Source: Isurus oxyrinchus (taxonomy: Eukaryota). From it: a stretch of DNA of 64,000 nucleotides. Position numbers and translations under genes: made by a program. This document shows positions 8,644-16,053 of this stretch, in pieces; position 1 is the first letter of the stretch, and each line of letters opens with the position of its first letter. The notes beneath the pieces are model-generated. The model saw nothing but the letters and a program-made list of their open reading frames with translations. It was not told the DNA's origin and did not search any database. Location: positions 109,244,001 through 109,308,000 of the forward strand of contig JANJGN010000007.1 of assembly GCA_026770705.1 (NCBI GenBank). Direction: 5' to 3'.

Positions 8644-8757
8644 CTGTACAGATACGTAATATAAAATTACCAGCGAGGATACGAAGCATCGTTAAGATTG
8701 CAAGTGAATTCATGACAATATGAGCGATTCCATAACTGTAGGTGGCAATTGTTGTAC
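8644..8757 (-). pseudogene. Candidate transmembrane exon of the VJ-C1 gene (TTIATYSYGIAHIVMNSLAILTMLRILAGNFILRICT)
   Basis: cttttag acceptor, CAG|GTAAGA donor, 114 nt, phase 1-1; this is the only open frame. Hydrophobic, with an Arg in the helix. Confidence 0.55.
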
Positions 8758-9240
8758 CTAAAAGGTATATGAAATGAAACGAAACTCAAATATTAAATGA
8801 TCTTCAATCAATTGTTCTGAGTTTAACCGTATTAGGTGTAAACCCTACAAATTAACTGATTATGTACATAGGGATGTTGGAGGAGCTGCTCAGTGAAAAA
8901 GGACAGGGTCCATCTAACCCACCTTCTGCTATCCTGGTAGTGGTATAATACAATGATGATGAAGTTGTTGATTAATCAAGGCTATCAAACACTATCAACC
9001 AGTCCAAAACAGTCCTGCCGCGAGTCGAAAGTCAGCCGTTCCTCCCAATTTTGCTGCACTTATTACATGTCATTTCTCAAATTACCCTTACACTGTATCC
9101 AAAAATTTCTCAAATAAATTTGATTATCACATTCATAAATCTGTACTAACAATTTCAATTGAGAGACATTTACCTTAATATCTCCTTAGAAACATAGCTT
9201 TCCAATTTCAAATGTTCTATCCAATATCATTGCTTATCAC

Positions 9241-10663
9241 AAAAACAGAATTACCTGGAAAAACTCAGCAGGTCTGGCAGCATCGGCGGAGAAGAAAAGA
9301 GTTGACGTTTCGAGTCCTCATGACCCTTCGACAGAACTTGATTTCGAGCCCAAGAAAGAGTTGAAATATAAGCTGGTTTAAGGTGTGTGTGTGGGGGGGC
9401 GGAGAGATAGAGAGAGAGAGAGGTGCTTGTGTAGACAAACAAGCAGTGATAGAAGCAGATCATCAAAAGATGTCAGCGACAATGGTACAAAAGAACACAT
9501 AGGTGTTAAAGTTAAAGTTGGTGATATTATCTAAACGAATGTGCTAATTAAGAATGGATGGTAGGGCACTCAAGGTACAGCTCTAGTGGGGGTGGAGGGA
9601 GCATAAAAGATTTTAAAATATTTAAAAATAATGGAAATAGGCAGGAAAAGAAAAATCTATATAATTTATTGGGGAAAAAAAGGGGGAAACAGAAAGGGGG
9701 TGGGGATGGGGGAGGGAGCTCACGACCTAAAGTTGTTGAATTCAATATTCAGACCAAAAGGCTGTAAGGTGCCTAGTCGGAAGATGAGGTATTCTTCCTC
9801 CAGTTTGCGTTGGGCTTCACTGGAACAATGCAGTAAGCCAAGGACAGACATGTGGGCAAGAGAGCAGGGTGGAGTGTTAAAATGGCAAGCGACAGGGAGG
9901 TTTGGGTCATTCTTGCAGACAGACCGCAGGTGTTCTGCAAAGCGGTCGCCCAGTTTACGTTTGGTCTCTCCAATGTAGAGGAGACCACATTGGGAGCAAC
10001 GAATGCAGTAGACTAAGTTGGGGGAAATGCAAGTGAAATGCTGTTTCACTTGAAAGGAGTGTTTGGGCCCTTGGACGGTGAGGAGAAAGGAAGTGAAGGG
10101 GCAGGTGTTACATCTTTTGCGTGGGCATGGGGTGGTGCCATAGGAGGGGGTTGAGGAGTAGGGGGTGATGGAGGAGTGGACCAGGGTGTCCCGGAGGGAG
10201 CGATCCCTACGGAATGCCGATAAGGGGGGTGAAGGGAAGATGTGTTTGGTGGTGGCATCATGCTGGAGTTGGCGGAAATGGCGGAGGATGATCCTTTGAA
10301 TGCGGAGGCTGGTGGGGTGATAAGTGAGGACAAGGGGGACCCTATCATGTTTCTGGGAGGGAGGAGAAGGTGTGAGGGCGGATGCGCGGGAGATGGGCCG
10401 GACACGGTTAAGGGCCCTGTCAACGACCGTCAGTGGAAAACCTCGGTTAATGAAGAAGGAGGACATGTCAGAGGAACCGTTTTTGAAGGTAGCATCATCG
10501 GAACAGATGCGACGAAGGCGAAGGAACTGGGAGAATGGGATGGAGTCTTTACAGGAAGCGGGGTGTGAGGAGCTGTAGTTGAGGTAGCTGTGGGAGTTGG
10601 TGGGTTTGTAATGGATATTGGTGGACAGTCTATCACCAGAGATTGAGACAGAAAGGTCAAGGA
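9241..10663 (-). mobile_element. Young 5'-truncated Penelope-like retroelement with TSD ttatcac(a)
   Basis: Uninterrupted RT C-terminus plus GIY-YIG ORF, 3' UTR and pLTR with hammerhead motif; ttatcac at 9234-9240 and 10664-10670. Confidence 0.95.
9720..10663 (-). CDS. Penelope-like ORF, partial: RT C-terminus/thumb, linker and GIY-YIG endonuclease
   Basis: LDLSVSI..STNIHYKPT..YL; CPRKRCNTC; NLVYCIRCSQCGLLYIGETKRKLGDRFAEH; EEEYLIFRLGTLQPFGLN. Confidence 0.9.
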
Positions 10664-11364
10664 TTATCACACTGCTTTAACCATTTTGCTACTTTATATT
10701 AGTGGCGTTACATTTAAGATAAATTAGTAAATGCGTCTGATAAAATAGTGACAAAGCATGATGGCATTAATGTCAGCATAGTTTGAATAATCACATAGCT
10801 GGATTTCAAAGCTCAAATATTTTGAAGTGGAAACGTAAGGGTAAATAACCTTTTCTTCATCTGAGAGCCTCGTAAAATGAGTGCAATAGTCATATACCAC
10901 GTCATACATCAGTCAACAAGCCCTTGGCCTGTTCAAATATAAATTATAAACATAGGTTGATTATAGTATAGTGGCAGGTCACCACCGTCTGGGCACATTC
11001 CTGCTGGGAAGAAATTGTATGTCTTTTAAGTGCATTGTTGCAACGAACTGAAAGAAGTCATAGCCCCACCCCTGGAACAAGTTGGGACAGTGCGGGTCCA
11101 GTTACAACCGATTTAGGAGAATGCACTGTCGTCCGGTGGAGAAATTGGAAGAAATCTGGAGTAACTGTTACCTTTGAAATAGTACCCATTAATTTCAATG
11201 GACTGGAAGTGGTACTATCTTACCAAGCAGTAAAAAAATGTGAATTCATCAATTTCCCATATGTTACTTTTGACATATCAGAAAATATGATTTGTTATAC
11301 CTGCTCCTGTTGCCTCCAAGCCGCTATGTACCCCGGCTCTGTTTTTGTCCCCCTTTCTCTTTTC

Positions 11365-11520
11365 CGAAATCAAGTTCTGTCGAAGGGTCATGAGGACTCG
11401 AAACGTCAACTCTTTTCTTCTCCGCCGATGCTGCCAGACCTGCTGAGTTTTTCCAGGTAATTCTGTTTTTGTTTTGGATTTCCAGCATCCGCAGTTTTCT
11501 TTGTTTTCTTCTCTTTTCCT
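11365..11520 (+). mobile_element. Solo Penelope-like pLTR
   Basis: Matches the pLTR of the 9241 and 5710 elements; contains the hammerhead motif. Confidence 0.9.
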
Positions 11521-13861: not shown

Positions 13862-14722
13862 TAAAATCTTAGAGTACAGAAAGAGTTATATGAATATACG
13901 TATGAAGGTGGGAACAGGGAGGAGTAGACCATACAGCCCCTCGAACCTGCTCCGCTATTTAATAAGATCATGGGTGATCTAATAGTAACCTCAAATCTGC
14001 GTCCTACCTAACCCCGTTAACCTATCACTTCCTTGCTTACCAGAAACCTATCCACCTCTGTCTTAAAAATATTCAAAGATTCCAACAACTTTTCAGGAAG
14101 AGAGTTCCAAAGACTCACCACGCTCTGAATGAAAAATAAATCGCATCATTTCTACTTTAAATGAGCGACCCCTTATTTTTAATCACTGGTCCCTAGCTCT
14201 AGATTCTCCAACAAGAGGAAATATTCTCCCCACACCCACCCTGTCAAGACCCCTCAAGATCATATATATTTCATTCAAGTTGCCTCTTACTCTTCTGAAC
14301 CACAGCGTATACAAGCCCAGTCTGTCCCACCTTCCTCATTAGACAACCATGCAATTTCAGATATTAGTCTGGTAAACCTTCCAATGCATTTACACACTTC
14401 CTTAAATTAGGTGACCAATACTGTGCACAATATTCCAAATGTGGCCTCACTAGTGCCCTGTGCAACTGAAACATAACCTCCCTACTTTTGTATTCAATTC
14501 CCATCGCAATAAATTATAACATTCTTTTAGCTTTCCTAGTTACTTGCTGTACTTGCTTACTAGCCTTTTGTGATTTATTCATGGGTTGTTTTGTCCTCTC
14601 GTGTCCGTCAGTTTGCAAGAACTACCCAATTAATCCCGTTCTCCTGCTCTTTCCGCACAGCCCTGAGTTTTTGTCTCCCTTGATAATCGTATTTCCAATT
14701 CCCTTTGTAAGTTATTATTGAA
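13862..14722 (-). mobile_element. Two nested CR1 3' fragments in the V-C1 intron
   Basis: Typical CR1 3' region at 13890-14582 interrupts an older CR1 tail fragment. Confidence 0.7.
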
Positions 14723-15507
14723 GAAGGGTTATTCTGCGGATAAGAGCGCGTGATATTTGCTGGTATTGAACATTGAACTAATAACGTGGCACTGTGATCC
14801 GTCGTATCGAGATGATACATTCCCTGAACTGTGATAATGTATTCGCTTTCATAATCCTGGAGAAGGACCGTGGAGCCTAACATATCTAAAACATCTTTAA
14901 AGAAAAAGTGAGATGTTGACAAGGAATATTAGCAGTTAAGTTGATTCCAAAGCGGAATGGCTTCAAATAATTCCAGTCGTGTTAATTCCCAATCGTAAAT
15001 AATTTGCAAGCAGCAACTCTCTGTGATTCACCATATCTGCTGCATGAAATATTCTCCACGGACGTTGGCGTTAGTCCAATAAGGTCAGGCATCGACCTTG
15101 ATCAAATTCATGAAATATAACTTACGCTTCAATATCTCTCATCGCATTTTTACGCTGCAGCCTAATCTCTTCAATAAAGCGACGGTTAGGGATTGTTCAA
15201 ATAGTTTAAAATACTACAAACCTTTTAAAAAGCCATAATTTACCCAAGATTCGCAGTAATGCAAGATATTGAAGATCTAAAATGTTCTTTGTTTTCCAAA
15301 CATATTTGCAATGATTTCCAAAATTATCCCATTTAAAATTTCCTTTTATATAATGAAGTGTAAATCAGCCTCATTTCACTTTCGCTCTCCGCTACAATTA
15401 CAATGTCTGACCCATAACCGTTGTCACTCCTCATCCTGCATTGATGCGATACAACGTGTTCTGAGGCAGTCCCATTTCAATCATCTCCTCCCTACAGTCG
15501 TACTTAC

Positions 15508-15825
15508 CATGCCCAATGAGTCGGGATCTGGTCCCGTTTCCAATCACTTTGTTATGAATTGCCGCCTTGCAGAAATAAATACCAGCATCATCCACACTTA
15601 CATCGACGAGCTGGAAAGAGGCGTTCCCCTCTTTTATGCGAAACTATTTACTCCCGTTTGATCCTCGTCCCAGTATTGGGCTGTCGCCACTTTTCCACCA
15701 GTAAAGGTTCACTCCCGGGATGTTTTTGAAGAGATGAAAAGTGCAATAGAAAGTAACGGCTTAGCCTTTGATGGAGGTCACAGGTTCAGGTATTTGTTGC
15801 ACTTGAACAGATGCCTCTGTTGCAG
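15508..15825 (-). pseudogene. Single-exon germline-joined VJ-type Ig variable domain, inactivated
   Basis: cttccag acceptor, G|GTAAGT donor, 318 nt, phase 1-1. ATEASVQVQQIPEPVTSIKG*AVTFYCTFHLFKNIPGVNLYWWKSGDSPILGRGSNGSK*FRIKEGNASFQLVDVSVDDAGIYFCKAAIHNKVIGNGTRSRLIGH shows B-strand Cys, Trp, DxGxYxC and J-like GNGT. Stops at 15761-15763 and 15644-15646. Confidence 0.92.
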
Positions 15826-15971
15826 CTGGAAGTCAATTAATACAAACAGCAGTTACTCAACGCACATGAGTGAGGAATAACGTTGGGGGTGGGGGGGGGG
15901 GGTGGGTGCGGATATTAGCTATACATACATAAATAACACAGTTAAATCGTTTCAGTCAAATACAGTCTTAC

Positions 15972-16053
15972 TGCACACGTTCAAACATCTACATGCTGTT
16001 TTTATATATTAGTAATAAGCGGAGAAGAATATCAAATAGTAACAAAGCTGCAT
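15972..16053 (-). pseudogene. Candidate leader (signal peptide) exon MQLCYYLIFFSAYY*YIKTACRCLNVC
   Basis: ATG at 16053; GTAAGA donor in phase 1 matching the V exon; 146-nt intron; one internal stop. Confidence 0.55.

What the first reader, a model, noticed from the sequence alone, without database searches (positions are those of the whole stretch)
8644..16053. Hidden pseudogene for a non-rearranging antigen-receptor-like protein: leader, germline-joined VJ exon, C1 exon, TM exon
Seen: four minus-strand exon candidates with phase-1 junctions (the C1 donor is uncertain). The V exon carries its J-like GNGT strand in the same exon, and I found no recombination signal. A C1-set domain follows. 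In-frame stops hide the V and C1 exons from the ORF track. Established: C1 domains are largely restricted to Ig/TCR/MHC/B2M/tapasin/SIRP and related proteins; single-exon VJ domains occur in NKp30, SIRP and CD28/CTLA4 and are discussed as models of the pre-RAG receptor. Inference: a dead member of a shark VJ-C1-TM receptor family whose functional paralogues may lie nearby and be poorly characterised. A germline-joined Ig light-chain cluster (known in sharks) is less likely given the divergent V and the candidate TM exon.
Basis: partly seen in the sequence, partly recalled or inferred. Interest (0 to 1): 0.8.

Follow-up and report, generated by a model that had tools for sequence, protein, structure and literature searches.

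The report
Dead shark VJ-C1 receptor gene relic
This is the decayed remnant of a shark gene for an antibody-shaped surface receptor that needs no gene rearrangement; its two outer-domain exons are real but broken by stop codons, so it is an ordinary pseudogene of a kind already known in sharks.

Summary
Partly confirmed. The minus strand holds a real but dead immunoglobulin-superfamily gene.

V exon (15825-15508): phase-1 AG/GT sites, the Cys/Trp/YFC marks, a GNGT strand in the same exon, no recombination signal, two in-frame stops. Its only true relative among 1.84 billion representative proteins is a 91-aa whale-shark fragment (57% identity, no gaps).

C exon (13346-13044): it meets two published C1-set marks and a third in part. 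It resembles a butyrophilin-type C domain. Its stop-bounded pieces hit no C1-set profile or C1 chain. It has two in-frame TAGs.

Contigs of the same species show all four stops. A sister species, about 3% diverged, shares one TAG, has CAG at another and carries its own frameshifts. Exon and intron diverge equally, so the gene died before the two species split.

TM exon: unsupported. Comparable candidates arise in 25% of shuffles, and no homologue was found.

Leader: not supported. It has an in-frame stop, and its GT donor reads AT in all four runs laid.

No RNA run holds the locus. Family placement (PRARP-like or an orphan lineage) could not be tested.

By its own unchecked notes, the scan has met intact and dead VJ-C1 receptor genes many times elsewhere in this genome.

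The parts
15508..15825 (-). VJ-type V exon, pseudogenised. 318 nt, phase 1 to phase 1, with in-frame TAA at 15763-15761 and TAG at 15646-15644.
   Evidence: Sequence and translation. Pfam on the 45-aa last piece: V-set E 1.1e-4, 22.8 bits, below the cut-off of 26; ig E 2e-4. Whale-shark P0061 aligns without gaps: 61% and 58% identity to the two pieces, tblastn 57% over 91 aa with E 1.8e-30. Same-species contigs carry no differences here (records 7 and 8).
13044..13346 (-). C1-like constant-domain exon, pseudogenised. 303 nt, phase-1 acceptor AG at 13348-13347, in-frame TAG at 13233-13231 (the Trp place) and 13128-13126. The putative donor is a non-canonical GC at 13043-13042.
   Evidence: Searches give the sequence. 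It has 13 residues between the Cys and the TAG, then F-Y-S, then C-x-V-x-H. These match the C1-set marks listed in PMC2785349 section 10. The composite pattern occurred in 0 of 300 shuffled windows. Smith-Waterman score 53 against a butyrophilin-type C domain, versus 24.5 +/- 4.3 for shuffles, with 0 of 2000 reaching it; score 24 against the V domain of the same protein. Against: no Pfam hit and no PDB hit for two of the three pieces.
8644..8757 (-). Candidate TM exon. 114 nt, phase 1 to phase 1, open, two Arg in the hydrophobic stretch. Unsupported.
   Evidence: Splice-site context. Mean hydropathy is 1.67-1.8 over 19 aa, which is not unusual. 25.5% of 200 shuffles give at least one candidate with an equally good donor. 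No Pfam or PDB match.
15972..16053 (-). Not supported.
   Evidence: It has an in-frame TAA. Position 15971 is C on the + strand in the window but T in X1, X5, X6 and X7, so the donor GT reads AT in every run laid. No ATG, hydrophobic core and phase-1 GT candidate lies between 15830 and 21290.
9239..11472 (.). Young Penelope-like element inserted in the putative C-to-TM intron.
   Evidence: 108-nt inverted arms at 9239-9346 and 11365-11472 are 100% complementary. The 316-aa ORF at 9720-10670 (minus strand) matches GIY-YIG with E 4.2e-4, below the Pfam cut-off.
13881..14650 (.). High-copy interspersed repeat inside the V-to-C intron.
   Evidence: Summed contig depth is 4e4 to 4e5 here, against about 20 beside it, in all four runs (table 2).
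16274..16686 (.). Repeat block just upstream of the V exon: two 74-nt direct repeats and a palindrome of the same arms as the Penelope-like element. It may have displaced or destroyed the 5' end of the gene.
   Evidence: D3 at 16274-16347 and 16372-16445; I4 at 16446-16547 and 16549-16650; D1 and D2 are copies of the element's arms.

Best explanation
This is a pseudogene of a non-rearranging IgSF receptor. A single-exon V domain carries its own J-like strand, and one C1-like constant domain follows it 2.2 kb downstream on the minus strand.

When it was alive, it would most likely have encoded a type I membrane chain. The V domain would bind a ligand. [quoted passage not shown] This functional reading is inferred, not shown.

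It is now inert. It has four in-frame stops, no usable leader, no RNA holder and neutral divergence. It died before this species split from its sister species, and each lineage has added its own lesions since.

The family is unresolved. Most likely it is a divergent dead member of the shark VJ-C1 (PRARP-like) receptors. Less likely it is an orphan lineage shared with the whale shark.
For: V exon: phase-1 splice sites, canonical Cys/Trp/YFC, GNGT in the same exon, no RSS. Pfam V-set E 1.1e-4 on a 45-aa piece. The whale-shark relative P0061 aligns without gaps. An ESM Atlas search with the whale-shark relative P0061 gave V-set clusters as its nearest neighbours, score 0.94 (a lead only).

C exon: the published C1-set marks are met. 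The composite pattern occurred in 0 of 300 shuffles. Similarity is to a C-type domain and not to a V-type domain.

Pseudogene status: same-species contigs X1 reproduce all four stops (records 1, 7, 8). In sister-species contigs the TAG at 13233-13231 is unchanged: all 12 differences of the X5 contig are listed and none falls there. Position 13128 reads CAG. There is a 1-base insertion behind 13191 (X5, X7), or an 8-base deletion at 13165 plus an insertion at 13190 (X6). C-exon divergence is 9/303 = 3.0%, against 4/144 and 16/534 in the flanking non-coding DNA. All nine exon differences change the residue.

Expression: 0 of 24 listed runs hold the locus as RNA.
Against: The three stop-bounded C pieces gave no Pfam hit at E up to 10. 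Two of the three gave no PDB hit. The third matched KIR3DL1 and OSCAR F-G strands weakly, E 0.04 to 2.9. These are Ig-like domains but, by my recall, not C1-set.

The similarity to the butyrophilin C domain was picked after seeing it as the best of 150 proteins. Its corrected significance is therefore modest.

The third C1 mark reads FYS, not F/Y-F/Y/H-P. The C donor is GC.

The TM and leader exons are unsupported, so 'membrane receptor' rests on analogy.

Sister-species differences inside the V exon were not shown (44 rows hidden).

The whale-shark relative lacks the first Cys and is only a fragment.
Confidence: 0.8

Rival explanations
1. A dead single-V receptor gene (NKp30/NCR3-like or CD28-family-like), with the C1-like stretch being a chance open frame in its intron.
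For: The GNGT-type G strand is of the kind seen in NCR3 and the CD28 family; this is recalled, and NCR3 is named as a VJ gene. The Atlas lists a PD-1 family cluster among the nearest, score 0.94. The C pieces have no profile hit. The C donor is non-canonical.
Against: The composite C1 pattern (Cys, FY at +5/+6, stop or Trp after 13 residues, xVxH 56 residues on) occurred in 0 of 300 shuffled windows. It lies on the same strand, 2.2 kb downstream, with a phase-1 acceptor that matches the V donor. Its similarity is to a C domain, not a V domain. No NKp30 chain appears among the best 60 of 127 PDB matches.
Confidence: 0.1
2. A decayed germline-joined Ig light-chain or TCR cluster gene of the kind known in sharks.
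For: VJ and C1 in this order, with a possible split-leader style start to the V exon. TCR alpha V chains appear among the weak PDB matches that cover the J-like end, E 0.016-0.06.
Against: The V piece found no Ig or TCR among the rows I inspected (10 of 150) of a search of 1.84 billion representatives. Its only full-length-exon relative is an unnamed whale-shark fragment. PDB Ig/TCR matches are no better than FcgRI or PD-L1. No RSS relic was found. The window has no other Ig exons.
Confidence: 0.04
3. A live gene whose stops are assembly errors or are bypassed.
For: There are four stops but no frameshift in about 205 codons.
Against: Independent contigs of the same species carry the same letters at all four stops. 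The sister species shares one stop and adds frameshifts. Divergence is neutral. No RNA holder was found.
Confidence: 0.01

Closest known systems
[quoted passage not shown] 2019, J Immunol), and the 'PRARP-like' VJ-C1 receptor clusters that this scan's notes report in the same genome
   Same: Non-rearranging, with a single-exon VJ domain. A VJ, one C1, TM and tail build is what I recall for PRARP. PRARP is named as a VJ gene in PMC10751288 (passage seen).
   Different: No PRARP sequence could be obtained, and the paper is not held, so membership is untested. The V piece reached none of them at E up to 1e-3. No head-to-head partner is in the window. This copy is dead.
UrIg and UrIg2 of elasmobranchs (PMC12227049, section 7 read)
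   Same: [quoted passage not shown]
   Different: Nurse-shark UrIg2 has nine C1-type domains, and UrIg also has several by my recall. Only one C-like exon was found here. No sequence similarity was shown.
NCR3 / NKp30 family of sharks
   Same: A non-rearranging VJ-type domain. The G-N-G-T strand is, by my recall, shared with NKp30.
   Different: NKp30 has no C domain, by my recall. No NKp30 chain is among the best 60 of 127 PDB matches.
SIRP alpha (PMC2785349)
   Same: A V-set domain followed by C1-set. The same three sequence marks define its C1 domains.
   Different: SIRP has two C1 domains. No sequence match was seen.
Whale shark gene model g28596.t1 (EukProt, P0061)
   Same: The only true relative found: 57% identity over the V exon without gaps.
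   Different: It is a 91-aa fragment with no C or TM part and Tyr in place of the first Cys. Whether it is an orthologue or paralogue, and alive or dead, is unknown.

Membership tests
IgSF V domain of VJ type (non-rearranging) | Match to the V-set profile | tested here: inconclusive
   Only stop-bounded pieces could be scanned. The last 45 aa gave V-set E 1.1e-4, 22.8 bits, below the cut-off of 26. The middle 38 aa gave ig E 0.097. P0061 gave ig E 0.023.
IgSF V domain of VJ type (non-rearranging) | B-strand Cys, C-strand Trp and Y-x-C in the F strand, with a G-x-G-T strand in the same exon | tested here: met
   The translation shows ..FYC....YWW....YFC.. and ..GNGT.. before the phase-1 donor.
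IgSF V domain of VJ type (non-rearranging) | No recombination signal sequence splitting or flanking V and J | tested here: met
   0 RSS-like sites in 12500-17000, and 1 in the whole window at 37224. The RSS consensus used was recalled.
C1-set Ig domain (marks as given in PMC2785349, section 10) | Exactly 13 residues between the B-strand Cys and the C-strand Trp | tested here: met
   13 residues lie between the Cys and the TAG at 13233-13231, which is one transition from TGG. That the TAG stands for Trp is inferred.
C1-set Ig domain (marks as given in PMC2785349, section 10) | (F/Y)(F/Y/H)P at the start of the BC loop | tested here: inconclusive
   It reads F-Y-S at Cys+5 to +7. The first two residues fit, and Pro is replaced by Ser.
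C1-set Ig domain (marks as given in PMC2785349, section 10) | x-V-x-H after the F-strand Cys | tested here: met
   It reads C-P-V-S-H. The sister species has Leu for the Pro.
C1-set Ig domain | Match to the Pfam C1-set profile or to solved C1 chains | tested here: inconclusive
   The pieces of 42, 34 and 24 aa gave no Pfam hit. The first two gave no PDB hit. The read-through could not be given to these tools.
PRARP | Sequence kinship with chicken or fish PRARP chains, and a TM plus cytoplasmic tyrosine motif | not testable with these tools
   No PRARP sequence was reachable. The length filter of the search for homologous proteins excludes full-length kin.
UrIg / UrIg2 | A VJ domain followed by several C1 domains | tested here: not met
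   One C-like exon only. There are no further Ig-like exons in the window by motif scan and by tblastn with 150 Ig-rich proteins.
NCR3 / NKp30 | A single VJ domain joined directly to stalk and TM, with no C domain (recalled) | tested here: not met
   A C1-like exon follows the V exon in phase.
Conventional IgL / TCR (germline-joined) | V and C cluster with Ig or TCR chains | tested here: not met
   No Ig or TCR was seen in the 10 of 150 listed relatives I inspected. PDB Ig/TCR matches have E 0.016 or worse. No tree was built.

The most novel reading that the evidence does not exclude
The V and C exons are the relic of a distinct, undescribed single-C VJ-C1 receptor lineage of elasmobranchs. 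On this reading it is neither PRARP, UrIg/UrIg2 nor NCR3. It was kept in frame for a long time, as the gapless 57% identity with the whale-shark copy suggests, and it may still be intact in some sharks.
Probability: 0.15. Interest if true: 0.5.

Novelty: new member of a known kind. Interest (0 to 1): 0.2.

Why it matters
Non-rearranging VJ-C1 genes are discussed as models of the receptor that the RAG transposon invaded. A dead copy adds little by itself.

It does show birth-and-death turnover of such genes in sharks. It also gives a dated example: one stop is shared with a sister species about 3% diverged, and later lesions are private to each lineage.

Its V domain is unusually isolated in sequence space. 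If an intact orthologue exists near the whale-shark fragment, that gene would be worth describing.

Tried and rejected
Representative search with the 45-aa V piece: 153 proteins had E up to 1e-3. The ranking was swamped by multi-Ig proteins that score by summed repeats, and only P0061 was a true relative. I fetched 9 of the 150 listed plus P0005, and ran Pfam on 4 of 150.

The search for homologous proteins with P0061 and with alignment A1: only P0061 itself came back. The length filter (50-159 aa) means this says nothing about full-length kin. The third search was not used.

Structure: AlphaFold of P0061 with A1 gave mean pLDDT 41.4. That is too poor, so no fold search was run.

ESM Atlas: generic V-set neighbours only.

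PDB with the A1 profile: weak generic V/I matches (FcgRI, PD-L1, TCR alpha). There was no family signal.

TM exon: by eye it recalled TCR or NKp30 membrane anchors with basic residues. That is recall only. PDB gave 0 hits, so I dropped it.

Head-to-head partner: a G-x-G-T hit on the + strand at 34942 is noise in a frame full of stops.

Rfam found no family in 8000-17500 at gathering scores.

The search of earlier findings by sequence gave nothing.

Papers: PMC12227049 (outline, section 7, passages); PMC10751288 (passages); PMC2785349 (passages); PMC11599192 (outline and abstract). Fu et al. 2019 and the UrIg 2023 paper are not held, so what I say of PRARP's build is recalled. Supplements were not opened. 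Those of PMC12227049 (gene models, alignments) may bear on UrIg2 kinship.

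
Full report
WHAT IS THERE. Read on the minus strand, the V exon runs from 15825 to 15508. Its acceptor is TTGACTTCCAG| and its donor is G|GTAAGT. Both junctions are phase 1.

Its translation has the B-strand Cys, a YWW Trp, D-x-G-x-Y-F-C and then G-N-G-T before the donor. 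V and a J-like strand therefore sit in one exon. Two stops interrupt the frame: TAA at 15763-15761 and TAG at 15646-15644. A scan for heptamer, 12/23 spacer and nonamer found no site in 12500-17000 and one in the whole window, at 37224.

IS THE V EXON REAL? The tools take no read-through, so I searched stop-bounded pieces.

- Pfam gave V-set E 1.1e-4 (22.8 bits, below the cut-off of 26) and ig E 2e-4 for the last 45 aa. It gave ig E 0.097 for the middle 38 aa.
- A phmmer search of 1.84 billion representatives with the 45-aa piece returned 153 proteins at E up to 1e-3. Nearly all were multi-Ig proteins that score by summed repeats.
- The one real relative is P0061, a 91-aa gene model of the whale shark (EukProt g28596.t1).
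- P0061 aligns to both long pieces without a gap, at 61% and 58% identity. By tblastn it matches the whole exon at 57%, E 1.8e-30. Local phmmer of the X-masked exon gave 108 bits.
- P0061 has Tyr at the first Cys and no further domains.
- Searches for shorter kin found only P0061 itself. The length filter makes that uninformative for full-length proteins.
- The PDB profile search gave only weak generic matches: FcgRI E 3.7e-4, PD-L1, TCR alpha.
- The Atlas gave V-set clusters, score 0.94.
- The AlphaFold model was unusable, pLDDT 41.4.

The V exon is real, V-type and very isolated in sequence.

THE C EXON. A phase-1 acceptor (CTCCATCAG|) at 13348-13347 opens a 100-codon frame down to 13045. 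It has TAG at 13233-13231 and at 13128-13126.

PMC2785349 (section 10, passage seen) gives three sequence marks of C1-set domains.

- Exactly 13 residues between the B-strand Cys and the C-strand Trp. The paper reports this in 1242 of 1295 C1-set sequences and in 14% of 350 other IgSF domains.
- (F/Y)(F/Y/H)P at the start of the BC loop.
- x-V-x-H after the F-strand Cys.

Here 13 residues separate the Cys from the first TAG, which is one transition from TGG. F-Y-S stands at Cys+5 to +7. C-P-V-S-H follows 56 residues after the first Cys. Two marks are met and one is met in part.

The short [YF]xCx[VA]xH signature alone is expected about once per shuffled window. The composite pattern occurred in 0 of 300 shuffles.

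The X-masked exon scored 53 by Smith-Waterman against the butyrophilin-type C domain of P0005. That domain hits Pfam C2-set_3, C2-set_2 and C1-set. Shuffles scored 24.5 +/- 4.3, and 0 of 2000 reached 53. Against P0005's V domain the exon scored only 24. P0005 was chosen because it was the best of the 150 proteins in hand, so this significance is modest after correction.

Against the C1 call:
- The three pieces gave no Pfam hit.
- Two of the three pieces gave no PDB hit.
- The 24-aa piece matched KIR3DL1 and OSCAR F-G strands weakly.
- The only phase-1 donor is a GC at 13043-13042.

I rate the exon as a real C1-like domain at about 85%.

DEAD, AND SINCE WHEN. Of the 24 runs listed, 20 hold the stretch or part of it and the other four (guessed to be RNA) hold next to none of its words. 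Four are of the source species (organism A, 84-88% of words) and sixteen are of a sister species (organism B, 33-36%, seven studies). No run is on record as RNA. I laid 4 of the 24 runs (X1, X5, X6, X7) on 12900-16150.

- X1 contigs carry no difference at any of the four stops. Record 1 has one other letter, at 13762. Record 7 has none. Record 8 has two, at 15971 and 16068.
- In organism B, the contig over 12900-13334 has 12 differences and all are listed. None touches 13231-13233, so that TAG is shared.
- Position 13128 is G on the + strand in B, which makes the second TAG a CAG.
- B also has a 1-base insertion behind 13191 (X5, X7), or an 8-base deletion at 13165 plus an insertion at 13190 (X6).
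- Divergence is 9/303 in the exon, against 4/144 and 16/534 in flanking non-coding DNA. All nine exon differences change the residue.

So the C exon was already dead in the common ancestor and has drifted neutrally since. Differences inside the V exon were among the 44 hidden rows, so I cannot say whether the V stops are shared.

The gapless alignment to the whale-shark copy suggests that the frame was under constraint for most of the time since those lineages parted. This is inference.

TM AND LEADER. The 8757-8644 frame has good sites, TTTTAG| and ACAG|GTAAGA, and is open. Its hydropathy (1.67-1.8) is matched by about 29 other segments downstream. 25.5% of 200 shuffles yield an equally well-flanked candidate. 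It has no Pfam or PDB match. A 2.2-kb Penelope-like element with perfect 108-nt inverted arms and a GIY-YIG-like ORF lies between the C exon and this candidate.

The G of its donor is A on the minus strand in all four runs laid. No alternative leader lies within 5 kb. A repeat block sits at 16274-16686.

WHAT FAMILY. The published non-rearranging VJ genes of sharks are these:
- NCR3;
- UrIg and UrIg2, which have a VJ domain plus many C1 domains;
- PRARP, which is cited as a VJ gene.

One C exon excludes the UrIg build. A C exon at all excludes the NKp30 build, as I recall that build. PRARP, which I recall as VJ, C1, TM and a tyrosine tail, fits best but could not be tested.

The scan's own unchecked notes report many intact and dead 'PRARP-like' VJ-C1 genes elsewhere in this genome, and receptor genes 15 kb before this window. 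I could not read those sequences. The window itself holds no other Ig exon.

VERDICT. This is a genuine pseudogene with V and C1-like exons. The TM exon is unproven, the leader is rejected and the family is unresolved. It is a new, dead member of a known kind, and of low interest unless an intact orthologue defines a separate lineage.

Noticed in passing
window 9239-11472: A Penelope-like element with 108-nt, 100% complementary inverted arms around a 316-aa ORF. The ORF's GIY-YIG match is below the Pfam cut-off (E 4.2e-4). The same arms form a near-perfect palindrome at 16446-16650. Rfam found no hammerhead in 8000-17500 at gathering scores.
   Followed up: partly
window 8390-8500, minus strand: An open 38-codon frame starts right after a TTGTAG acceptor, 140 nt downstream of the TM candidate. 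It contains T-A-Y-S-S-I, an ITSM-like motif (the consensus is recalled). It would need a phase-0 junction, whereas the TM candidate's donor is phase 1. Such motifs are common by chance: 5 in 3.6 kb.
   Followed up: partly
window 15971 and 16068: The window differs from contigs of the same species (X1) at these two places. At 15971 all four runs laid, of both species, agree against the window. It is either a private variant or an assembly error.
   Followed up: no
window 13881-14650: A very high-copy interspersed repeat. Summed contig depth is 4e4 to 4e5, against about 20 beside it, in both species. It lies inside the V-to-C intron.
   Followed up: no
window 13122 and 13103: The sister species reads Trp for Gly (X5 and X7, not X6) five residues before the F-strand Cys. 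It reads Leu for the Pro inside C-x-V-x-H. By my recall both are closer to the usual C1 pattern, so the copy in the window may be the more decayed one at these places.
   Followed up: no
window 16274-16445: Two 74-nt direct repeats, 95% alike and 98 nt apart. They look tRNA-derived (SINE-like) and lie just upstream of the V exon.
   Followed up: no
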